Assembly: GCF_036971445.1 (NCBI RefSeq)
Contig: NW_027211801.1
Coordinates: 558,001 to 622,000 of the forward strand
Direction: 5' to 3'
DNA length: 64,000 nucleotides
Origin: Narcine bancroftii
Lineage: Eukaryota
In this document: piece after piece, positions 25,785-40,900 of the stretch
Position numbering within the stretch: the stretch's first letter is position 1
Layout: each line of letters begins with the position of its first letter
Position numbers and translations under genes: made by a program
Notes under the pieces: generated by a model
The model's input: only the letters and a program-made list of their open reading frames with translations
Told to the model about the DNA's origin: nothing
Database searches by the model: none

Positions 25785-27430
25785 TTTATTTAAAATCTAA
25801 ATCCACAAAAAAATACATAATATTAACATACAAATTTTTCCCCCCGTATATACCCCCTCCCTTAGTTCCCTTCCATCTTCTACAAACCCAAACAAAAAAA
25901 AAACAAACCACCATAGCCATGTTCGATGTCACCAATCAACCATTACATATTTAGACCCATACATTTCATAATCCCTGCACATTCACAAAAAAAGGTATAC
26001 AGATGAAATAAATTGTAAATTATATTTTCCAATGGAATACAGGATTCCAATCATATGCCATCTCTGAATACTTAATTCAATTTCATCCTTTCAGGTTATA
26101 GCTTTACATTTTCTCACGACTGACGATGCCAACCGAATAAATGCAATTTGAAATGTATTTTCAAACTCCATTTTTTTAATATGACCGAATAAAATACTAA
26201 CGGGTCTAATGAAAGCTTAAATTTAAACAACTGCTGCAAAAATACACTAGTCCCATTCCAAAAGCGTTTCACCTTCTCACATAACCAGAGTGAATGTAAA
26301 ACAGACCCTATCTCTTCCCCACATTGAAAAGACATATCCAAAGAGATAAATCCATATCTCTTCAACTTCTCAGGAGTTAAGTAAAGTTGATGAATAAAAT
26401 TATAATCAACGTATCTATATCTTACTGTCCTCACATATTGTCATCCAACCATCCTGAGAAATTGAAACAGACAAATCCGCCTCCCTCTTCCTTCTCGCTT
26501 TATAAATACCCGACCTGGGCATCTTATTTTGTAATAAAGCATACATTTCTGTAATTAATTTGTTTCCCTCCCTTCAATAATTAAACATTCAACTCTAGTC
26601 CTTCTAGGTAATCTCAAACGGTGTCCAAAATTATCCAGTAACAAAGCATGGACATGATAGTAAGTAAACAATGTATTTGAAGGCATTCCATATTTGTCCA
26701 ACAATCTTTGAAATGAAACAAAATATAACAACTCATCATAACAATCTTTGACCAATATAATACATTTCTTTCCCCAAATTTTCAGGAATACATTATTTAT
26801 TGAAAAAGAAAGAGGGCTGAAATTCTACCTTCAGTACCAATAGCAACATTTGTCTTTTACCATAATTCCATCAAATGTTTTAAACTAATAAATTATAATT
26901 TGGAAAAGTTGAGGATTCTATTGATAAATAAACTGCTTCATTCTTTGTTCATAAATCTGAGCCCTTTGAATTTTAGCTCAACTTAAAGATTGTTGTGATT
27001 CAAACATTCTATTAATAAACTTTAAATGTTCCGCTTCATAATAATTCTGAATATGTGGGAATTATAAAACTCCAAGTCAATTTTTGTGGAGACACTCTTG
27101 CCAATTTACCTTTCCATAAAAATGATCTTACACGCGCATTTAAATCCTTAAATAACTTTCTAGAAATCCTACATGGAATCAATTGAATAAAATACTGAAT
27201 ATAGAGGAAACATTCATTTTAAAAAGCTGTCGTTCTGGACACAACCAAGAAAGTCAAAGGACACCCCTGTCTAGCTGATCTAGATAATATAAAGAAAGAA
27301 GATACTTGTCCATTCGTCCCCACTCTTGCCAATGGATTTTTATATAAGGCCTTCACCCAACCAATAAAGAGTGGCCCAAATTTAAATTTTCGCAAATCCT
27401 TAAACAAAAATCCCCATTCCACTCTGTCTA
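25785..27430 (-). mobile_element. L1 ORF2 fragments with 3' UTR, internally deleted
   Basis: EWGFLF..L.KFKFG...RQGCPL; YNFIHQLYLTPEKL. Confidence 0.8.
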
Positions 27431-27570
27431 CAAGGTAACCTTGATCAGAGAGAGGGGTTAGATTAGATGTCTTTTTTAGATTTAATTTTTAGAGTTTTGT
27501 GCTTTTTCTCTTTTTCTTTTGTACTATTTATTTCAATAAATGGGTTTACTATATAGATTATTTCTTATTA

Positions 27571-28149: not shown

Positions 28150-29200
28150 GTAAAAATCACCGTTAACACTTAATGACTATTTTCGAATCCACGGCAAAGC
28201 ATTATCTTCATCATGTGAACCACAGCAGTTAGCAGAACAAAAGTATCTGGAAAAAGCAAAGCAAAACACCTTACAGGATTGGCCCAATGAACATTGGTTC
28301 GAGGGTTGCTGAAGGCATTGCAACTGAACACAAGGCACAGGGTCAATCCCCAGAGACAATCAGATCTCACACCTATAGACAATACACTCAAGGCTGAGGC
28401 TTCTGACTTGTATTTTTTTTCTTTGGCTTGGCTTCGCGGACGAAGATTTATGGAGGGGGTAAAAAGTCCACGTCAGCTGCAGGCTCGTTTGTGGCTGACC
28501 AGTCCGATGCGGGACAGGCAGACACGATTGCAGCGGTTGCAAGGGAAAATTGGTTGGTTGGGGTTGGGTGTTGGGTTTTTCCTCCTTTGCCTTTTGTCAG
28601 TGAGGTGGGCTCTGCGGTCTTCTTCAAAGGAGGCTGCTGCCCGCCAAACTGTGAGGCGCCAAGATGCACGGTTTGAGGCGTTATCAGCCCACTGGCGGTG
28701 GTCAATGTGGCAGGCACCAAGAGATTTCTTTAGGCAGTCCTTGTACCTTTTCTTTGGTGCACCTCTGTCACGGTGGCCAGTGGAGAGCTCGCCATATAAT
28801 CCGATCTTGGGAAGGCGATGGTCCTCCATTCTGGAGACGTGACCCATCCAGCGCAGCTGGATCTTCAGCAGCGTGGACTCGATGCTGTCGACCTCTGCCA
28901 TCTCGAGTACCTCGACGTTAGGGGTGTGAGCGCTCCAATGGATGTTGAGGATGGAGCGGAGACAACGCTGGTGGAAGCGTTCTAGGAGCCGTAGGTGGTG
29001 TCGGTAGAGGACCCATGATTCGGAGCCGAACAGGAGTGTGGGTATGACAACGGCTCTGTATACGCTTATCTTTGTGAGGTTTTTCAGTTGGTTGTTTTTC
29101 CAGACTCTTTTGTGTAGTCTTCCAAAGGCGCTATTTGCGAGTCTGTTGTCTATTTGATGAAAGGTAAACCACGGACTCTTGGTGCATCTTTACGAAGAAC
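28150..29200 (+). pseudogene. Possible degenerate Ig-superfamily V-set exon (CD2/SLAM-like) split by the RTE at 28416-29150
   Basis: Acceptor ttgcag at 28144-28149; frameshifted motifs SIWKKQSKTPYRI, EHK-HRV, NTLKAEASDLY|LMK; several frameshifts are required. Confidence 0.35.
28416..29150 (-). mobile_element. RTE LINE, 5'-truncated
   Basis: ORF 28473-28901 nearly identical to 63539-63967; flanking tattt repeats. Confidence 0.92.
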
Positions 29201-29731: not shown

Positions 29732-32700
29732 TGAAGTGCCAGTTGATGAAGTAGACAAAGACGATGTGGTCAAACAATAATCATGTCTTTCATGAGCAGA
29801 AACTCATGGTACAATAATGAAAGACAATGGGTGCATATACAAATTTATCCAAGGGAAGTGTCCTTAACAGTAGAGATAATGCACAACCAATGTTAGTACA
29901 GCAAGGCTCGCCAGAGGAGAGACAGGCAGCTTGGCAGACATTCACCACAGTCTCCCCCCAGCAGAAGAAGGGTTAAAATCAAAATGACAGCTGCTAGGAA
30001 AGACTGAAGCAAGCGATACATGGATACCATGTTTGGTGTTTAGATACCTTAACAGCCAAAATACGCCAGTACCTAGCAAGCAATCGAAATATAATGAGAT
30101 GTTTTATGAATATGTCAGCCTATCAGGTTATTTATGAATTCTGTTGCTTCGTCTCAAAACAGGTGGCTCCTTTGCAACGTTGGGAACCGATATAGGTCCT
30201 GGGTCTGTTGTATGAGTAGGACTGGCTTCTGGACCCGCTCCAGAATCGCCAACGTGAGGCAGTGGAGCCTCAGCATGGCCATCTGAAAGCTTACTAGGGG
30301 TCAAGGCTGGGGTGGTATGGGGTGAGTCGAAATTCTCAGGCTCCCTCTGATAGGGGTGCGAGGAAGGGGAAAACCAGGTGAGGCCAGATCTCTTAGGGTA
30401 CAGTGCTAGTACTCCCATCTGAGAATTTAACATGAGTGTAGTTGGGGTTAGTATGCAGTAGCTGAACTGGTTGGACTAAGGGGGCTGCTTTACACACCTG
30501 AACATGGCTCTTCAGCAGCACGGTTCCAGGCTCAGATTAACAGGCTGGCCACTCCATCACAGTTCCTGATTTCCTAGGAAAGGCAAACATACGTTCATGA
30601 GGTGTTTGATTTGTTGCAGTACACAATAAAGACTGAATTTAATGTAGTGCCTCTGGCAGCTCCTCCTGCCACCAGGTTACAGGGTAACTACATGTTTTTA
30701 AAGCATTGCAGTCTTCCAGACAGTAGCACTAACCCTTTCAACCTGCCCATTACCCTTTGGGTTGTTGCTCATGGTATGGCTGGTGGCAATCTCCTTTCGT
30801 AGCAGGGCTCGCCGCAGTTCAGCGCTCATGAATGCTGAGCCCCTATTGGTATGAATGTGATTGGGAAAACCAAAAATGCTGAAAATTCTGTCAAGTGACT
30901 TAATGACAGAAGCTGACGAGACGTCAGGGCAGGGTATTGCAAAAGGAAACCTGGAATATTGGTCAATTACATTCAGGAAATATACATTTTTGTTGTTGGA
31001 AGGTAACGGTCCTTTGAAATCCTCTCAAAAGGTTGGGTTGCCTTGATGAGAATGGCCTCCGGAGCTTTGAAGTATTGCGGTTTGCATTCTGCGCAAACAG
31101 GGCAGCTTTTAGACAGTTTCTTGACGTGTTCCAGAGAGTAAGGAAGGTTGTTAGCCTTTATGTAGTGGAAGAATCTCATGGACTCCTGGGTGTCACAGTC
31201 TGCTATGGATCTCTTTTACCCCCTCCAGATGAGCACCAGCAGCAGATCATGACAATGTGTCAGAGGGATCACTTAACCTGCCCTGTCTGTACTGAATCTC
31301 ATAATTATAAGTCGAGAGTTCTATTCGCCAGTCTGCCATCTTATCGTTCTTGACCATACTTTTGTGTTTAGTACTGAACATGTAGGCGACAGATTTCTGA
31401 TCAGTAACAAGTGTAAATTTTCTGCCGACTAAAAAGTGTCTGCAGTAGCGAACAGCTTCAATAATAGTCTGGGCTTTTTTTTCAATGGCAGGATGTTTAA
31501 GTTCAGGTCCGCGTAAAGTGCGGGAGAAGAACGCCACAGGTCTGCCCTTTTAAGGGTTCCTGCCAAGGCACAATCTGAGGCATGAGTTTCCACCTGGAAG
31601 GGACATCCTCGTCAATGGAGGAGAGTGAAGCTTTGGCAATGTCAGATTTAATTCTCTCGAAAGCCTTCAAGGCTATTGGAGAGAGAGGAAATGATTTTGT
31701 GTCAAACAGAGGGCGTGCCTCCATGGCTTAGTCCCAACCCATTTGCAGTAGTAGGAAAAGAATCCCATACACCTTTTAAGGGCTTTTGCTGAGTTTGGGG
31801 GTTCTTACCGGGTCGAGGTAGAATGGGTAGCCCAGAATGGGTAGCCCAGAATCGGTAGCATTGAACACACATTTGCCCTCGATAAATGTAAGGTTGAATT
31901 CTTTAGCTGTTGCTCAAAATTTCTTTACATTGTTGTCGTTCTCAACTTGTGTTTTCCCACAGATGGTGACATTATCCAGATAGGGAAATGTACCCTGTAA
32001 CTAAAACATCCTAACAATCTTTTCTATTTCCCTCTGAAACATGGACACACCATTAGTGACCCTAAAATGTACCCTTTTAAACCGGTATAACCATCCCACC
32101 ACCCCACCATCAGCCTCAAAAGCCGTATGGGGCTGTTCCCTTTTCTTAATGGGGATTTGATGATAAGCTGCTTTGAGGTCGATAGTGGAGTACACTTTGT
32201 ATTGTGCTATCTCTCTAATCATTTCATTGATGCGTGGCAGGGGGTAGGCATCTAAGTTAGTGTAATGGTGGATTGTCTGGCTGTAGTCAATTTCCAATTG
32301 TCTCTTAGTGTGATTTTTCACGACTACCACTTGGGCCTGCCACTGACTCTAACTAGGTTCAATTACTCCCTCTTTAAGCAGTCTCTGGGTCTCAGCTTTG
32401 ATAAACTCACAATCCTCTTTGCTGTAAAAACGGCTCTTAGTGGCAATTGGCTGGCACTCAGGGGATAAATCACTGAAAAGGGAAGAAGCTTTGATCTTTA
32501 ATGCAGACAGACCGCAGTTACTAGCATGGGAGATGGTAAGTGTGGGTAGTGGCCCAACAAAATTTAACACTACTGAGATTGAATATCTAGCCCCAGCAAC
32601 ACAGGGGCGCAGAGCTCTGGCATAATAAAGAGCCACCCATCAGCCAGGCAATGTCCCTGCAAATTTAAAGTAACTTTACACTTGTCCCGTACAGTTTTTG

Positions 32701-33894
32701 TAAATTCACTGCAAACCATCGATATCTTTTGGTTTGCTGGATATCTCCACAAATTGAAGGCTCTGGCAACTCTCTCGTGGATGTAGCTGTCAGTACTCCC
32801 TGAGTCTATGAGACAATCAAGTGTCTCACCATTCACCTCCCCCTTCATAGTTGACATCCCCCAAGCTTTGCAGTCAATTGAGCTACCACAGGGAGTCTCT
32901 CCTTGCCATCACTTGAAGTCGATTTAGCCTGCTGCTCTGAAGATTCCCCCTTTTCACAGTTGTCTTCTATTCCTGCAGCTCCAGGACACATTTTCTTGGT
33001 GCTTCTCTTCTTCTTATCAGTGAGAGTACTTTTCGACTTACATGCTTTAGCAAAATGGCTTTGTTTTCAACAACAGCTGCAGGTAGCAAATCAAGCTGGG
33101 CACTTCTGACTGCAGTGCCAGCTCCTATCACAGAAACAGCATTTTTCAGGAGTTTGTCCTTTTCATTCCTTTGGGGTTCCAGCACTTCTGGATGTTTCTT
33201 TTTCGGTTTCTCGCATTTCACTGGACCGCATGGCACTTCTCAATGCTTTAGTTAAATTGACTGCCCGGTCGTAGGTTAAGGGCTCCATATCCAGAAGCCT
33301 CTGTCGGATGTAATTGGAGTCAATCCCATTGACAAAAGCATCCAGCTTCAAGGCTTTGTGGTATTGTTACACATTGACTGCCCTGACATCACATTCGTTT
33401 GCCAGTGAGCCGAGGGCCAGTGCATAGGCAGCATCACTTTCCCCGGGTTTCTGGCGTCTAGTCAGCAACTGGTGTCAAGAAAGCACTATATTCTGTGGTG
33501 CTGCATACTAAGCAGCAGTAGCTCCTTGCATTAGGGCAAAAGGGACTTCACCCAGCAAAGAGTATCGGTGGCCCCACTCTATCGCCTCATTGATCATGTT
33601 GTTTTGAGTCATGTATTAATTGATACAAGCAATCCAGTGGTTGAAAATTTATCTGGTCCTTGGGGCAGACTGGTCGATTATCAGCCGCTCTGGCTTGAGT
33701 GCTGCATCCATTTCTGCTAATAAAATTGAAGTGAAAGTTAATGAAGTAGACAAAGACGATGTGGTCAAACAATAATCATAGCTTTTATTAGCAGAAACTC
33801 TTGGTACAATACAATACAGTTATATCCAAGGGAAGTGTCCTTAACAGTAGAGATAATGCACAGCCAATGTTAGGACAGCAAGACATTCACGACA
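29732..33894 (-). mobile_element. Gypsy LTR retrotransposon with both LTRs (5' LTR 33727-33894, 3' LTR 29732-29949); gag-PR-RT-RH-IN decayed; self-complementary PBS
   Basis: LTRs start and end TG...CA and align with each other; PPT ctggggggagac about 29950-29961; gag MDAALKPERL from 33711; PR LIDSGSTDSYI; RT LDAYPLPRI..STIDLKAAYHQI; RH AFFSRTL..FTLVTDQKSV; IN CPVCAECK; no TSD seen. Confidence 0.9.
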
Positions 33895-33899
33895 CTGGT

Positions 33900-36800
33900 C
33901 TTCTTTGAAACAGTCCTGAACTCTCTTAATACCCTTTTGATTATTAAACATTTAAAAATAAATAAGCTGATAATGAAATAACAGTGTTTGGATTGGTAAT
34001 TTACCCTTTGACCTAAAACCCTCTTTCTTTTAAACCAAATCCTAAACAAATGTTTTAATTACATTGCATAATTGCACATTACATTCCCGCAATAAATCCA
34101 CATTCCTTTTAAATATAAACTGATGTATCTCAACTTCACATATGTAAGCTATTTCAACCTTTGCCAACTCAGAGGTTGATCCACATCCATAAATCTACTA
34201 AAAAAAAATTCAACTGAGCTGCATCATAATAATTTTGAAAGTGAGATAACTGCAATCAATTTCAAGAATATTTCCACGTAAGTTTATGTAAAACTACTCG
34301 GGCTAATTTTCCTTCCATAAAAACTCCCACAATACCTTATTCAAGTCCTGAAAAAACCCTTTGAAAGTAAACATGGTATAGACTGAAACAAATCCATTTT
34401 AATCCTTTTTAATAAAGGGACATAATTCAATTTATATAAAGACTGGTAGAATGTGTTGACTACCATTCCCATATATTTGATTCTATCTGACCACTTAAAT
34501 TTCATAATACATTTATATTCTGAATCATCTCCATTCCCAACTGACAATATTTCACTTTTAACCAATTAATTTATAACTCCCCAAATTTTAACAAACAATC
34601 TTTTAAATATTTCAAAGACTGTTCCGGTCCTGTCAACTGTAAATAAATGAATCTTATATTCATCCTCCACAACTTTCATTCCTTTAATCTTATCATTTTG
34701 TCATATTGTCTGAGCCAATGGTTCAATAGCCAATGCAAATAAGGCTGGTAACATTGGACAACCTTTTCAAAACAAACACGTTATGTTAAATGGTAAGGAA
34801 ATTTGACCATTTGTCACCACCCTATCAGATGGGTTTCTATATAAAGCTTTAACCCTGCCTATAAAATAAGGACCAAAATTAAACTTCTCTAACACCTTAA
34901 ACAAAAAATTCCACTCGACCCTATAAAAAGCTTTTCCACATCCAGTGCAATCCTGGTTTGGTTGCTGTCTAAACACTTTGACTAATGTTATCAATCTAAG
35001 AACATTATCACATGCATTTCTATTTTTAATAAAACCTGTTTGATCTATATGTATCAACTGAGGTAAATATTTGGCAAGTCTATTCGCTAACTCCTTCGCT
35101 ATCGTTTTATAATCTATATTTTATAAAGATATAGGTCTATACAAAGACACCTTCAATGGATCCCTATCTTTCTTAGGAATCACAGTAATTATAGCACTTG
35201 AACAAGATTCTGGTAACAACTGCTCCTCTGTTACTTGTTGCAGCACATCTCCAAATATACAATATAAATCTTCATCAAATACTTTATAAAATTTAACAGA
35301 AAATCCATCATCTCATGACGACTTTACATTTGGCATTTCTTGTAGAGCCTCTTTAATCTCAAAGTCCATAAATGGTTCATCCATTTCTTTAAACTCGTCC
35401 TCCCCTAAAACAGTAAGTTTAATTTAAATAAATAGAATTTGATAGAACCAGCATCCTGCTTTCCCTCAGAATATATAATTTTTGATAAAATGAATAAAAC
35501 TGATCATTAATTTTCTGAGGTTTATAGGTAAGTGTTGAGTTATTTTCACAGCATTAATGGTTTGTGATGTCTGCTCTGTATTGAATTGCAATGCTAATTC
35601 CTTATGAGCTCACTCACCCAATTCATAATAACGTTGCTTAGACTGATAAGTCTGTAAAGTATGAAATGTAATTTCAACTTCATTAAAGCAGCTGTTTTTT
35701 AATCTTCTATAGTATCTTTCTGGAATTCCTTTTCCAATTCAGCAATTTGTTTCTCAATTGATGAGCTTTCCACCATATATTGCTTTTCAATTTTCGTAGT
35801 GTAACTAATAATTTGCCCTCATAAATATGCTTTCAAAGGATCCCACAATACAAAATTACTACATACTGAATTGATATTCTCAGCCAAAAACAAAGTAATC
35901 TGCTCCTTAACAAAAGTAATAAAGTCCAGTTTCATCAATAACATTGTATTGAATTTCCATCTATAAGATGATTCTGAAACTACACAGAGAAAATATAACA
36001 TAGAATGATCTGATATAATCTGACTTTTATACTCAACCTTTAATATTCTGCCTTGCAGATGTGCCGAAACCAGAAGAAAATCTATTCTCGAAAAGAAATC
36101 ATGTCCAGAAGAATAAAAAGAAAAGTCCTTCTCTGTAGGATTTACTCTCCTCCACACATCAACCAATTCCAAATCCTTCATCAGAGCTCCTATTTGAATG
36201 GCCACTTTTGATTTCATTATACTTTTCAGAGATCTGTCCAATAAAGGATCCAAAACACAATTAAAATCTCCCCCGACCAAAGATTATTACGAGCCGGATT
36301 AAGCAATAAAAAAGCCTCCGACATAAACCATTCATCATCTACATTAGGTGCATAAATATTTAACAAAGTCCATGATTCTGCCAAAAATTTGCAATTAACC
36401 ATTAAAATCCTCCCAGCATTTCATTCAAAGGATTTCAATTCAAACGGTAATTTCTTATAAATTAAAATCGCAGCACCCTTCACTTTAGAATTAAAGGAAG
36501 AAGAAAATACATGGCCAACCCACTCTCTCTTTAATTTCAAATGTTGTTTTTTACTCAAGTGTGTTTCTTGCAAAAAAGCAATATCAACTCGTTTTCGCTT
36601 AATTGGATTATTCAAAGACTGAACATTAAAAGTTGCAAAATTCAAATTAGACATTTCTTAATCTAATAATATATTCCAGTACTATAAGATTATGCTCCCC
36701 TTCTAATTCCCTTAATATTCTAACTCCCCTATATAAAAATTCCAAAAAAAGAAAAAAAAACAATCCTCAAACAAACTACTAAAAAAGAAGTAGCCCCCTA

Positions 36801-38110
36801 AAAATCTGGGTGTGGTGAAACCTACTAGTGGCAGATGACTAAAGGTCTCAGTGTCATCCACAACTGCCCCCCCCCCAGTCAGACTTTCAGAAAGTACTGA
36901 AACAAAAATAATCAACCCAATGATTCCAGTCCCAATGGTTTTTCTGGAGCTTCGATATCAAGACGACTTTGTGTCAATTCAGTTTTCTTCCCATTTTTTC
37001 CATGTTTCCCATTCTTCCCATTTCCATGACTCTTTACCCTCCTCTTAGGTGAAAATGATGACGATCGTCCATTTCCTCATAAATCTGGCAATGAATTGGC
37101 AAAAATTAATGCATCATGATCATTTTCAAAGAATTGAGATCGAACGTTCCCATAAAAAACTTTCAGCACGGATGGATAACGAAAGGCAAATTTATATCCC
37201 TCTCACCACAATACTTCTTTAGCTGAGTTATATTCTCGATGCCTTCTAATAATTTCTGAACTCAAATCTGCATTAAAAAAACACCCTATTGTTCTGGACC
37301 ATTATTCCAACCTGATTCTGCCGTTCTTTCTACACCGCCATTCCCAACATCATTTCTCTGTCCTGATATTTCAAACAACGAATCAAAATTGCTTGTGGTG
37401 GTTGGCCTGGAAATGGTTTCTTCCTTAGTGCTCTATGTGCTCGATCTAATTCCAGACCATCCAGAAAAAATTCCTTGCCCATCACCTCAGGAATCATTGT
37501 CTTAAAAACTTTGTCGGATCAGAACCTTCTATATCTTCTGGAAGACCTACTATTTTACATTATTTCTTCGACTCTGATTTTCTAATACACTGCCTGGCAG
37601 TTCGGGAGTGCGCAGTGTAGCGTCGGAAGACGCATGTGTGCAGTCGGTGACTTTGCTGGGCATGCGCGGAGCGTCACAGGTCCAGGAATTACTGAACAAG
37701 GTGTGGGCTGTGGGGGAGCCCAAACAGCAGCGGGCTGATGCATTCAGCATGCTGTAAACGGGCTTCCTAACCCGCAGCTGCACTGAAGATGACCTATGAT
37801 GTTAGAGGAGGAAGAAAGATAAACGTTACAGGAAGAAGTGGGGACTGACACCAAAGAAAGTAGGTCTCGAAGGGAGGTGATGGAACCTGGACTGGATTCT
37901 GTGTTCACAATTTTGGAAGGGATTGCTCATCAAATGGAATATTTGTCAATACAGATGTCTACACAAATGACTGAAGGATTTATGGAAGTGGAAAGTAAAA
38001 TGACTACTATATGTGAAGAAATGACTTGTATGAAGTAAGATATTAATGCAGTTAAAGGCGATGCTAGTAGATGAATAAAATCAGTGGACACTGTACAAGA
38101 TAACTTTAAA
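33900..38110 (-). mobile_element. L1 with 5' inversion: ORF2 (EN-RT) and ORF1 3' part on minus (33900-37590), upstream ORF1 piece on plus (37590-38110)
   Basis: ORF2 start MSNLNFATFNVQSLNNPIKRKR (36654), GGDFNCVLDP, SRIDF, SDHS; the plus piece EPGLDSVFTILEGIAHQM is homologous to ORF1 at 39991-40518. Confidence 0.82.
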
Positions 38111-40900
38111 AAGATTTTATCAGACCATCTTAATTTTATAATGTGTTTACATGCTTTATAATTCCACTCCAATACTGGTAGTATTTCATTCTTATCCCAG
38201 TTTGCCTTGTACCCAGATAACACACCAAATTGAACTAAACATTCTTGTAAATACTTCAAAGATTGTTCTGGACGTGTCAAATAAATCAATACAACATCAG
38301 CAAATAAATTAATCTTATATTTATCATCTGCAATTTTTATCCCATTGACATTATCATTCTGTTGAATTGCCTGAGCTAATGGTTCAATGACCAACTCAAT
38401 CAAGGCTGGTGACAATGGATAACCTTGACATGTTGATCGTGTTAATTTAAATGGCAAAGTTTGGCCATTCGTCACCACCCAAGCAATCAGATTTTTATAG
38501 AATGCTTTAACCCAAGCAGTAAAATGAGGATCGAAATTTAACTTCTCCAACACCTGAAATAAAAAATTCCACTCAACCCAGTCAAATGCGTTTTCCACAT
38601 CAAGCGTAACCACCATTGGTTGGTTGGGATGCTGTCTCGATCAACGTTATCAATCTAAGAATATTATCGCATGCGCATCTGTTCTTAATAAACATGGCTT
38701 GATCAACATGCACTAACTGAGGTAAATATTTAGCAAGTCTATTTACCAATACCTGAGCTATTATTTTACAATCCACATTTAATAAAGAAATTGGTCGATA
38801 CGAAGCTACATTCAATGCATCTCTATCTTTCTTTGGAATCATTCTAATTATCGCACTCGAACAAGATTCTGGTAATGACTGTTCATCTCTTATTTGCTGA
38901 AGCATATCCATAAATGTAGGAGTCAAATCTACAGAAAACACCTTGTAAAACTCTACTGAAAATCCATCATCACCTGGTGACTTTCCATTTGGCATCTCCT
39001 GTATTGATTCCTTAATCTCAAAACGTGTAATTGGAGATTCCAATTCTTTCACTTCTTCCTCTACTAAATCCGATAAATGCAATTGAGATAAAAAGGATTC
39101 AATAGAACCATCATCCTGAATTCCCTCAGAAGGATGTTACTTCTGATAAAATGAATAAAATTGGTCATTCATTTCCTGACGTTTGAAGTAACTATTGAAT
39201 TATTTTTAACAGCGTTAATAACGCATAATAACGTTGGGTAGATCTTTGAATTAGGTGCTCATACGTTTGTAAAGAATTATAATGCAATTTCAACTTAGCA
39301 AATGCTGCTTCCCTATCTTCTGTGACCTTCTTCTGAAATTATATTTCCAACTCAGTTATTTGTTTCTCCAAAGCTAAACTTCCCACTGAATACCATTTTT
39401 TAACTTTTGTAAAATAACTAATAATTTCACCACGTAAATATGTTTTCAAAGCATCCCATAAAATAAAATTACTACGTACTGAATTAGTTCTAACCCTTTT
39501 TCCACAGCCCTTATTTAGCTGAATTAAATTCTCTACGTCTCTTAATAATTTCCTGACTCAAATCAGCATTAAAAAAAACACTCTATTGCCCTGAACTATT
39601 ATTGGAGTTTGATTCTATTGAGCCTTTTGAACACCAATCCGTAATATCATCTCCCTCTTCTGATATCTCAAACACCTTATCAAAACTGCTCGTGGTGGTT
39701 GGCCCGGAAAAGGCTTCTTCCTCAACACCCTATGCTCTCGATCCATTTCTAAACCATCCAGAAAAAAATCACTTCTCAGCACATCAGGAATCCATTCTCT
39801 CAAAAAATTTCACTGGGTCTGAACCCTCAATGTCTTCCGGAAAACCTACTATTTTGATATTATTTCTTAGGCCTTGATTTTCCAAAGAATCAATCTTCTT
39901 CAACAATTCTCTCTTCTAGATCTCCCATCCCACAAAATAATCTTCCACTTTTTCCATTTTTTCACTTTTCCGTACAACTTGATCATGAAATCATGAAAAG
40001 CCTCTTAAATTTGCAAAAAAATTATCCACCACTTTCAGATATCTATTGACATCAACTTTGACCATATCCTTATCATTCTTTACAAATGACATTTCTTCAC
40101 AAATATTATTCATTTTAACCTTCATTTCCATAAATCCTTGATTTAACTGTGTAGGCATCTGCAGCGACAAATTATCCATCTGACGAGCAACCCCTTCTAA
40201 AATAGTGAACACAGATTCAAATCCAGGCTCCCCTACTTCCCCTTGGGACCAACCTTCTTCAACCATCGCTCTCAGGTGAGATTCTTCCTGTCTTAATTCC
40301 AACAAGGCAGAACTTCCTTCTACCTCTTCATCTGCACTTGTAAAAAGACGACCAGTGCGATTGCAGAACTGCATCCCCGTCAAAAGTGAGTCGACTTCGT
40401 CAGCCTGCTGCAGTCTGGGTCTCCCCGCAGCCCACACCTTTTCTAATAAGTCCTGGATTAGCGTCGCACCTGCGCAACAAACATCATTCATCCAACTCAC
40501 CTGCATGCCTGGCTTCACGGGCGTACGTACCAGAGTCAGCTGAGCTCAAAACAATGACGGCACCATCTTGCAACTGCAAGCTAGGCGCCGGCATTATATT
40601 TAACCGACCAGGAGTACGCTGAGCCTTGGGTATTAATACTGTCGACTCCTTGGTTTCAACCTGCTGAGTAGGCCTCAATTCTTCAACACTTTTATGAGGT
40701 AATTCCTTCTGTAGTTGAGCCTTAGCTTTCTTCACATTTGCAGTCATTTTCATTCTTCACCTTTCAGACACCCTTAAAAACTATTTTATGTAACTTTCAA
40801 AACTTTTAAACTCGGGTATTAATTAGTTCAACTGGGGAGAGGTGGAACTGAACGTCCTCTTCCTATGCCATCCCGCCATGCACCCGCCCACCCCCCCCAC
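38111..40900 (-). mobile_element. L1 with 5' end and ORF1, internal deletion of the endonuclease region, RT fragment
   Basis: G-rich 5' end ...ggcgggatggcatagg about 40862-40900; ORF1 MDREHRVLRKKP..PPRAVLIR; RT KSPGDDGF, YRPISLLNVD, LFADVVL. Confidence 0.85.

What the first reader, a model, noticed from the sequence alone, without database searches (positions are those of the whole stretch)
33709..33830. Self-priming Gypsy element: the PBS is a perfect 15-nt complement of its own LTR, not of a tRNA
Seen: one nt after the 5' LTR end (33727), the minus strand reads ttttattagcagaaa (33725-33711), with no TGG tRNA-type PBS. The LTR contains its exact complement, tttctgctaataaaa (33797-33783), about 27 nt downstream of a TATA-like gatataa, where transcription should start. 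The same 15 nt contain the AATAAA signal, and the last PBS base is the A of the gag ATG (33711). Known: Tf1/sushi-type elements prime by annealing the transcript 5' end to the PBS, followed by RNase H cleavage. Inference: this element (gag MDAALKPERL; no chromodomain seen) self-primes, and the same pairing could mask the 5' LTR poly(A) signal and gate gag translation. Self-priming Gypsy lineages may already be catalogued, so novelty needs checking.
Basis: partly seen in the sequence, partly recalled or inferred. Interest (0 to 1): 0.8.

Follow-up and report, generated by a model that had tools for sequence, protein, structure and literature searches.

The report
Self-priming site in ray Gypsy retrotransposon
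A dead jumping gene in this ray genome has, where a tRNA primer site should be, a 15-base stretch that pairs perfectly with its own terminal repeat; about 30 distant relatives keep this pairing with different letters, so the lineage most likely primes its own copying, as yeast Tf1 does.

Summary
On the minus strand, LTR bases 33797-33783 are a perfect 15-nt complement of 33725-33711. This second stretch starts one base after the 5' LTR end (33727) and ends on the A of the gag ATG.

The element is a decayed, compact (about 4.2 kb) Ty3/Gypsy copy with 168-218 nt LTRs and no chromodomain.

I fetched 80 related loci from metagenome contigs. In 29 of them the same two-arm stem sits at the LTR/gag junction, with very different letters. 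93.7% of cells pair, against 29-49% in slid controls, and 13 of 16 pairs show changes on both sides. In six relatives with both LTRs, the LTR ends 0-2 nt before the second arm. A variable primer site that covaries with the LTR excludes a tRNA or other host RNA.

Tf1-like self-priming is the best reading (about 0.75). The transcript start, the RNase H cut and the suggested poly(A)-masking and translation-gating roles remain untested.

Self-priming is known for Tf1/sushi chromoviruses, but I found no report for this chromodomain-less metazoan lineage.

This scan had already reached the same reading on other DNA of this genome (s1-878363, s1-878113).

The parts
33727..33894 (-). 5' LTR (168 nt), TGTCGTGAAT...CACTTCA
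   Evidence: Alignment with the 3' LTR and sequence reading. The family LTR ends are shown by copies with unrelated flanks (table 7). The start motif TGTNGTGAA is shared with relatives L009 and L047.
33820..33826 (-). TATA-like GATATAA, 27 nt before the first arm
   Evidence: It is mutated in the 3' LTR copy and is not conserved at this distance in relatives.
33783..33797 (-). First arm: putative self-primer TTTCTGCTAATAAAA, containing AATAAA (33789-33784). G33798 can add a G-U pair.
   Evidence: The homologous arm in 29 relatives always ends ...TAAA and is followed by GCC or ACC.
33748..33763 (-). Inferred poly(A) cleavage region: CA dinucleotides 23-24 nt after AATAAA, followed by the GU-rich stretch TCGTCTTTGTCT
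   Evidence: Inference and the general rules for poly(A) sites. No RNA data were available.
33726..33726 (-). Single spacer A between the LTR end (CA) and the primer site
   Evidence: The motif CA-A-TTT is conserved in nearly all relatives.
33711..33725 (-). Second arm: primer-binding site TTTTATTAGCAGAAA, a perfect complement of 33797-33783
   Evidence: with covariation shown.
33709..33711 (-). gag start codon; its A is the last base of the primer site
   Evidence: The N-terminus (M..LKPERL) matches the N-termini of full-length relatives.
30128..33711 (-). Decayed gag-pol with many stops and frameshifts. It holds two CCHC knuckles (about 33141-33040), protease (32857-32570), RT (32345-32001), RNase H (31537-31247), integrase zinc finger (31179-30973), integrase core (about 30960-30600) and a C-terminal tail ending ...LRRSNRIHK (about 30130). 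There is no chromodomain.
   Evidence: Three-frame translations, Pfam scans and comparison with alignment A2.
29951..29959 (-). Polypurine tract GGGGGGAGA directly before the 3' LTR
   Evidence: Similar purine tracts stand before the 3' LTRs of L009 and L047.
29732..29949 (-). 3' LTR (218 nt). It carries 32-nt and 18-nt segments that the 5' LTR lacks and is about 91% identical elsewhere.
   Evidence: Copies with unrelated flanks break at 29732 and 29949.
29788..29802 (-). 3' LTR copy of the first arm, TTTCTGCTCATGAAA (2 mismatches). No second arm follows this LTR.
   Evidence: At 29791 nearly all family copies carry the 5' LTR letter, i.e. AATAAA (table 3).

Best explanation
This is a dead copy of a compact (about 4.2 kb) chromodomain-less Ty3/Gypsy retrotransposon. 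Its lineage starts reverse transcription with its own RNA instead of a tRNA.

In the genomic RNA, a 12-19 nt stretch of the 5' LTR folds back onto the complementary site that begins one base after the LTR. In this copy the stretch is 33797-33783; it ends ...UAAA and contains the AAUAAA signal. By analogy with Tf1, the element's RNase H would cut the RNA at the 3' end of that stretch (between ...AAA and GCC). The freed 3'-OH would then prime minus-strand DNA through U5 and R, followed by transfer to the 3' R.

Shown here:
- the pairing itself;
- its exact position at the U5 boundary;
- its conservation through compensatory changes across a metazoan-wide lineage;
- the absence of any tRNA-type site.

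Inferred:
- the RNase H cut;
- that the first arm is the 5' end of the transcript;
- cis rather than trans pairing.

Because the first arm holds the poly(A) signal and the second arm abuts the gag AUG, the same stem may also silence the 5' poly(A) signal and affect translation. That is speculation.
For: 1. Perfect 15-nt complement, 16 bp with a G-U pair, at the stated coordinates.

2. The repeat finder reported a stem of this kind, usually the only inverted repeat it reported, just before gag in 20 of 22 related loci examined, each with its own letters. Examples are TTTCTAGTCGAATAAA (L047), TTCCAAGTT[G/T]ATTAAA (L022/L009) and TTTAG[T/C]TAGTTAAA (L004/L012); in the last two pairs of relatives the change is matched on the other arm.

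3. In six relatives with both LTRs (96-100% identical), the LTR ends 0-2 nt before the second arm and the first arm lies inside the LTR.

4. Pair counts on 19 sequences: 93.8% of cells pair against 29-50% in slid controls, 13/16 pairs change on both sides, and 0/500 shuffles reach any of the five measures. RNAalifold predicts the same stem on its own.

5. A covariance model finds the structure in 30 sources, 11 of them not used to build it. Pair counts are unchanged: 93.7% paired, and 105 cells changed on both sides against 14-28 in slid controls.

6. The stem is the minimum-energy fold in all 14 sequences folded, with z from -2.5 to -6.3.

7. The primer site starts TTT, not TGG, so a tRNA CCA end cannot pair there. 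gag starts 0-4 nt after it in most relatives, leaving no room for another primer site.

8. Published precedent: Tf1 self-priming has been demonstrated and is inferred for Tj1 and for Tf1/sushi elements from fungi to vertebrates (PMC4600332, PMC6317226).
Against: There is no RNA evidence. The transcript start, the poly(A) site and the RNase H cut are all untested, and contigs cannot show RNA ends.

The TATA at -27 in this copy is not conserved in relatives.

I first chose the arms with an inverted-repeat finder, and the second alignment was fitted to the structure. Both inflate the percentage of paired cells. The fixed anchors (AAA-GCC and CA-A-TTT), the slid controls and the non-seed hits reduce this bias but do not remove it.

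Within this ray family I could check only one arm position across copies (29791). The second hairpin seen next to the primer arm in many relatives is not evident in this copy.

This copy itself is inactive, with many stops, and integrase reads HTNRG where relatives have HSDRG.
Confidence: 0.75

Rival explanations
1. The stem is a regulatory or structural RNA element only, and reverse transcription is primed by something else. For example, it could hide the AAUAAA of the 5' LTR while leaving the 3' LTR signal free, because the second arm exists only after the 5' LTR. It could also act in packaging, dimerisation or control of gag translation.
For: In most relatives the first arm contains AATAAA, ATTAAA or a similar A-rich hexamer. 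The second arm abuts the gag ATG. The second arm is absent after 3' LTRs. Occlusion of poly(A) signals by hairpins is known in retroviruses (my own knowledge).
Against: A purely regulatory stem need not begin exactly at the U5 boundary, yet in every relative the second arm starts 0-2 nt after the LTR end. That boundary is set by where the primer sits. No alternative primer site exists between the LTR and gag. The hexamer itself is poorly conserved (GTTAAA, TTTAAA, TTCAAA and GATGAAA occur), whereas the pairing is conserved. This role can coexist with self-priming and need not replace it.
Confidence: 0.13
2. A host small RNA (a tRNA 3' end, an internal tRNA segment as in copia, or an snRNA) is the primer, and the match to the LTR is secondary.
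For: Most LTR retrotransposons use tRNA primers. TGG occurs at 33710-33708, right after the 15-mer.
Against: The site next to the LTR starts TTT in all 30 sequences and varies widely after the first 4-5 bases, always matching that element's own LTR. A host RNA end would be invariant across nematodes, arthropods, cnidarians and vertebrates. The TGG at 33710 is 17 nt from the LTR and is part of the start of gag (ATG GAT). No tRNA gene is in the window, so no direct comparison with host tRNAs was possible.
Confidence: 0.03
3. Chance, or a local rearrangement of this one copy such as an inverted duplication.
For: The sequence is AT-rich. The two LTRs differ by indels and no target-site duplication is visible, so this copy has been rearranged.
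Against: The chance expectation is about 10^-6. The same architecture recurs in 29 independent related loci.
Confidence: 0.01

Closest known systems
Tf1/Tf2 of Schizosaccharomyces pombe and Tj1 of S. japonicus (self-primed reverse transcription; Levin 1995-1998, as summarised in PMC4600332)
   Same: There is no tRNA primer site. The site next to the 5' LTR is complementary to an upstream stretch of the same LTR RNA. Many relatives have a further stem next to the primer duplex, reminiscent of the U5-IR-like stem that Tf1 requires (the title of Lin and Levin 1998 is cited in PMC4600332).
   Different: In Tf1 the pairing is 11 nt and has been proven to be the mRNA 5' end, cut by RNase H. Here the arms are 12-19 nt and neither the 5' end nor the cut is shown. 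The hosts here are animals. The integrase has no chromodomain. The primer arm carries the poly(A) signal, and the primer site runs into the gag AUG.
Vertebrate Tf1/sushi group (sushi-ichi and relatives; Butler et al. 2001, cited in PMC6317226 and PMC4600332)
   Same: These are vertebrate Gypsy elements for which self-priming is predicted from LTR/primer-site complementarity.
   Different: Those are chromoviruses with longer LTRs (mean 572 nt in the Sushi set of PMC3601003). This lineage has 155-223 nt LTRs, a single gag-pol ORF of about 1200 aa and no chromodomain. I could not read Butler et al. and could not build a tree, so separate ancestry is likely but not shown.
Plant Tcn1 (Gypsy) and TAR (Copia) lineages with predicted self-priming (PMC6317226)
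   Same: Self-priming is inferred from sequence alone, as a property of a whole lineage.
   Different: They have different hosts and belong to different superfamilies or clades. Tcn1 is a chromovirus.
Mag lineage of metazoan Gypsy elements (Mag, SURL, Jule; A/B/C clades)
   Same: The lineage is spread across metazoans, including cnidarians and vertebrates (PMC2774666). Mag C LTRs are very short, averaging 174 nt (PMC3601003). The elements are compact and lack a chromodomain.
   Different: Membership was not tested because no reference sequences or tree were available. I found no statement in the papers held here that Mag-lineage elements self-prime.

Membership tests
Ty3/Gypsy (Metaviridae) LTR retrotransposon | Two LTRs (TG...CA), gag with CCHC knuckles, and pol in the order protease-RT-RNase H-integrase | tested here: met
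   LTRs. Pfam finds RVT_1, RT_RNaseH and aspartyl protease on window pieces. The order and knuckles are read. Full-length relatives carry all domains.
Self-primed LTR retrotransposons (functional class defined by Tf1) | No tRNA-type (TGG...) primer site next to the 5' LTR | tested here: met
   The site starts TTT in the window and in all 29 relatives.
Self-primed LTR retrotransposons (functional class defined by Tf1) | The sequence directly after the 5' LTR is complementary to a stretch inside that LTR | tested here: met
   15/15 in the window. Arms of 12-19 nt occur in relatives, and the second arm starts 0-2 nt after the LTR end.
Self-primed LTR retrotransposons (functional class defined by Tf1) | The complementarity is kept by compensatory change among relatives | tested here: met
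   13/16 pairs change on both sides and 93.7% of cells pair, against 29-49% in slid controls.
Self-primed LTR retrotransposons (functional class defined by Tf1) | The complementary stretch is the 5' end of the element's mRNA | not testable with these tools
   Only contigs were available, and they cannot show RNA starts. A TATA lies at -27 in this copy only.
Self-primed LTR retrotransposons (functional class defined by Tf1) | RNase H cuts the RNA duplex to make the primer, and the primer RNA is joined to minus-strand DNA | not testable with these tools
   This needs biochemistry. The invariant AAA|GCC junction after the first arm is only suggestive.
Self-primed LTR retrotransposons (functional class defined by Tf1) | An extra stem next to the primer duplex (U5-IR-like) | tested here: inconclusive
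   A hairpin (A/G)CC...GG(U/C) stacks on the long stem in L047, L005, L004, L012, L008, L068 and L072, but not in the window copy. No formal covariation test was done.
Tf1/sushi group (chromoviruses) | Chromodomain at the C-terminus of integrase | tested here: not met
   PF00385 is absent from four full-length relatives, from the precomputed domains of the 120 best relatives and from the window's C-terminal ORF. The protein ends with the shared ...LRRS.R... tail.
Tf1/sushi group (chromoviruses) | RT/RNase H/integrase phylogeny places the element inside the group | not tested
   The script machine was lost and no reference sequences were at hand. The nearest named clusters in the ESM Atlas are 'K02A2.6-like' and 'Gypsy retrotransposon integrase-like 1', which is a lead only.
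Mag lineage (Mag/SURL/Jule) | Phylogenetic placement with the Mag A/B/C clades | not tested
   There is only a resemblance: short LTRs (PMC3601003), a metazoan-wide spread (PMC2774666; hosts) and no chromodomain.

The most novel reading that the evidence does not exclude
A large chromodomain-less Gypsy lineage, found from cnidarians and nematodes to arthropods and cartilaginous fish, has replaced the tRNA primer with a self-primer that is also its poly(A) signal. One 12-19 bp stem, ending at the gag AUG, would then do three jobs. It would prime reverse transcription. It would tell the 5' LTR (signal hidden) from the 3' LTR (signal free). And it would set a switch between translation and reverse transcription of the genomic RNA. 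Self-priming would then not be a peculiarity of Tf1/sushi chromoviruses but would have arisen, or been kept, in a second major branch of Metaviridae.
Probability: 0.3. Interest if true: 0.65.

Novelty: new variant of a known kind. Interest (0 to 1): 0.5.

Why it matters
In the papers I could read, self-priming of reverse transcription is treated as a trait of Tf1/sushi chromoviruses and a few plant lineages. tRNA priming is taken as the rule for animal Gypsy elements.

A metazoan-wide lineage without a chromodomain that keeps a covarying LTR/primer-site stem would widen the known range of the mechanism. It bears on whether hairpin priming is ancestral to LTR elements, as proposed in PMC3601003. 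It also offers a very small natural system, with an LTR of about 170 nt and a 5' leader that is essentially only R-U5 plus the primer site, for studying how one RNA stem couples priming, poly(A) choice and translation.

There is a practical point too. LTR-annotation pipelines that require a tRNA primer site will miss or misjudge these abundant elements; thousands of contigs from the ray runs matched this one.

For this window itself the feature is a dead relic with no expected effect on the host.

Tried and rejected
1. Scripts: run_python failed and was then lost. I therefore built no tree, made no per-copy statistics and ran no tRNA comparison by script.

Genomic context of the Logan, ENA and NCBI relatives could not be fetched, so I used JGI metagenome contigs instead.

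3. Transcript start: I looked for contigs that might be transcripts (L001, L002, L011, L021). L001 turned out to be a circularly permuted assembly, as do L011, L013, L020, L062 and L077 (model hits inside or after the pol match). None of the contigs gives an RNA 5' end. Upstream regions of 20 elements show no conserved TATA or initiator at a fixed distance.

4. Read laying used contigs only, and its table showed 40 of 662 variant places. It confirmed the LTR ends and one arm position (29791), but not the state of every arm base across the family.

5. No target-site duplication was found...GACCAG before the 5' LTR against GAAATT... after the 3' LTR.

6. tRNA: no tRNA gene lies in the window. 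The tRNA reading was rejected on the TTT start and on the variability of the site.

7. L026 and L013 gave no stem at the expected 5' place. L026 keeps the U5 end and primer site but its upstream LTR is replaced. L013 has the stem elsewhere in a permuted contig.

8. Papers: the primary papers of Levin and of Lin and Levin are not held, and I did not attempt Butler et al. 2001 (no PMC id; subscription journal). Seven full-text searches found no report of self-priming in a non-chromoviral animal Gypsy lineage. This is absence from this library, not proof of novelty.

9. Pfam found nothing on the ORF at 28473-28901.

Full report
**The thing itself**

The element lies on the minus strand. The 5' LTR runs from 33894 to 33727 (TGTCGTGAAT...CACTTCA). 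The 3' LTR runs from 29949 to 29732. The shared parts are about 91% identical. The 3' LTR also carries two extra segments of 32 and 18 nt.

Laying contigs of public runs on the element shows that the family is very abundant. About 13,900 contigs of one DNA run matched at 80% or more. Many copies break into unrelated flanks exactly at 29732 and 29949, which fixes the LTR ends.

After the 5' LTR comes one A (33726), then TTTTATTAGCAGAAA (33725-33711), then TGG. The LTR holds the exact complement TTTCTGCTAATAAAA at 33797-33783, which includes AATAAA. No other exact copy exists in the 64 kb window. The 3' LTR copy (29802-29788) has two mismatches. At one of them (29791) nearly all family copies carry the 5' LTR letter.

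The stem, 16 bp with a G-U pair, is the minimum-energy fold.

**The element**

Three-frame translation shows a decayed gag-pol. It starts MDAALKPERL and has two CCHC knuckles. Protease, RT and RNase H are confirmed by Pfam. An integrase zinc finger and core follow, then a C-terminal tail ending ...LRRSNRIHK about 180 nt before a purine tract (GGGGGGAGA) and the 3' LTR.

There are many stops and frameshifts, and the integrase reads HTNRG where relatives have HSDRG. The copy is dead. No target-site duplication is visible and the two LTRs differ by indels, so the copy may be a recombinant of two family members.

**Relatives**

A profile-free HMMER search with the 114-aa RT piece gave thousands of relatives. 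Among them are intact single-ORF gag-pol proteins of 1150-1284 aa (alignment A2). Their N-terminus (M..K.L.P..L...W.HW), knuckles, domain order and C-terminal tail match the window copy.

None has a chromodomain, either in Pfam scans of four of them or in the precomputed domains of the 120 best relatives. Named hosts include the stingray Hypanus sabinus, Trichuris suis, Armadillidium, two hemipteran insects, a moth, a pseudoscorpion and a sea anemone.

**The test of the reading**

In the 660 nt before gag, the repeat finder reported a stem of this kind, usually the only inverted repeat it reported, in 7 of 8 loci and then in 13 of 14 loci. The arms are 12-19 nt, lie 21-66 nt apart, and have different letters in each family.

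In six relatives with both LTRs (96-100% identical, total length 4.0-4.2 kb, LTRs 155-223 nt), the first arm lies inside the LTR and the LTR ends 0-2 nt before the second arm.

Aligned arm to arm (A4), all sequences share three features: the first arm ends ...TAAA followed by GCC or ACC; the LTR ends CA; and one A then TTT follow. The rest varies.

Pair counts on A4 give 93.8% of cells paired, against 29-50% when the partner is slid by 1-3 columns. 13 of 16 pairs change on both sides, 75 cells are changed on both sides against 12-23 in slid controls, and 0 of 500 shuffles reach any of the five measures. Close pairs of relatives show single compensated changes: L009/L022 have G to T with C to A, and L004/L012 have T to C with A to G. 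RNAalifold predicts the same 13-bp stem unaided.

A covariance model built from A4 found the structure in 30 sources at E below 0.001, 11 of them not in the seed. Counts on this larger set are the same: 93.7% paired, and 105 cells changed on both sides against 14-28 in slid controls.

The stem is the minimum-energy fold in all 14 sequences folded, with z from -2.5 to -6.3.

Two caveats apply. I first picked the arms with an inverted-repeat finder, and A6 is fitted to the model. Both favour pairing. The fixed flanking anchors, the slid controls and the non-seed hits argue that the signal is real.

**What it means**

The boundary between U5 and the internal region is where the primer sits. The second arm occupies exactly that place in every relative, and gag starts 0-4 nt after it in most. 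There is no room for another primer site.

The site starts TTT, not TGG. It differs among relatives while always matching its own LTR. A tRNA or any other host RNA is therefore excluded.

The known mechanism that fits is Tf1-type self-priming. There the RNA folds back, RNase H cuts the RNA duplex, and the upstream piece primes minus-strand synthesis (summarised in PMC4600332). The invariant AAA|GCC junction is a natural candidate for the cut.

In this copy the canonical layout of a poly(A) site (AATAAA, CA 23-24 nt later, then a GU-rich stretch) would give an R of about 38 nt. About 23 nt of that would remain after the cut for strand transfer. This is inference only.

Many relatives have a second hairpin stacked on the long stem right after the primer arm, which recalls the U5-IR-like stem that Tf1 needs. 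The window copy does not show it.

**What is not shown**

- The transcript start. Contigs cannot show it, candidate transcript-like contigs led nowhere, and no promoter motif is conserved at a fixed distance.
- The RNase H cut, and cis versus trans pairing.
The first arm does contain an A-rich hexamer in most relatives, but the hexamer is loosely conserved (AATAAA, ATTAAA, GATAAA, GTTAAA, TTTAAA, TTCAAA), whereas the pairing is strict.

**Comparison with what is known**

In the papers I could read, self-priming is reported for Tf1, Tf2, Tj1 and several fungal elements, for the vertebrate Tf1/sushi group, and by prediction for plant Tcn1 and TAR (PMC4600332, PMC6317226, PMC6934838, PMC3601003). 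PMC3601003 speaks of 'some chromoviruses'.

This lineage works like Tf1 but fails the chromovirus test because it has no chromodomain. Its short LTRs, compact single ORF and metazoan-wide spread resemble the Mag lineage (PMC3601003, PMC2774666). I could not build a tree: the script machine was lost and I had no reference sequences. Placement therefore remains open.

Seven full-text searches found no report of self-priming in such elements. The key older papers are not held, so prior description cannot be excluded.

Two earlier follow-ups of this scan reached the same reading on other copies in this genome (s1-878363, s1-878113). My evidence was gathered independently of theirs.

**Verdict**

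The mechanism is known and the lineage and layout look new, so I class it as a new variant of a known kind. Interest is moderate. This copy is a fossil, and the same discovery has already been made elsewhere in this scan.

Noticed in passing
window 29732-29949 versus 33727-33894: The two LTRs differ by 32-nt and 18-nt indels, and no target-site duplication flanks the element. Contigs of other copies carry either LTR form (tables 5 and 8). This copy may therefore be a recombinant of two family members, and its 9% LTR divergence would then not date the insertion.
   Followed up: partly
L047:2930-2945, L005:2917-2934, L004:1994-2013, L012:2101-2115, L008:920-934 and L068:2937-2951 (approximate): In many relatives a second small hairpin, (A/G)CC...GG(U/C), starts directly after the primer arm and stacks on the long stem. 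It may correspond to the U5-IR-like stem of Tf1 or belong to the poly(A) site. It is not evident in the window copy.
   Followed up: partly
L001, L011, L013, L020, L062, L077: In these contigs of about 3.9-5.7 kb the LTR/primer-site junction lies inside or after the pol match. They are circular permutations of one LTR plus the internal region. The cause could be assembly cycles through identical LTRs or possibly one-LTR circles.
   Followed up: no
window 28473-28901 (minus strand): A 142-aa ORF lies just beyond the 3' LTR. It contains ...LRWMGHVSRM... and a C-terminal Cys/His motif (CNRCNRVCLSRIGLVSHKRAC). From memory it looks like the tail of a CR1/L2-type LINE ORF2. Pfam gave no hit.
   Followed up: partly
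proteins P0194 and P0196, P0157 and P0189: Relatives of this eukaryotic retrotransposon are filed in public databases as 'MAG: DDE-type integrase [bacterium]', 'transposase InsO family protein' and 'UNVERIFIED_CONTAM'. This suggests host or eukaryotic DNA inside metagenome bins.
   Followed up: no
L022:1821-2155: A tandem array of a 47-nt unit (six or more copies) lies about 650 nt upstream of the element.
   Followed up: no
window 34799-39792 and 27302-27438: Diverged direct repeats (66-77% identical) are spaced about 3.66 kb apart next to the element. They probably belong to the duplicated immunoglobulin light-chain units that other notes describe in this window.
   Followed up: no
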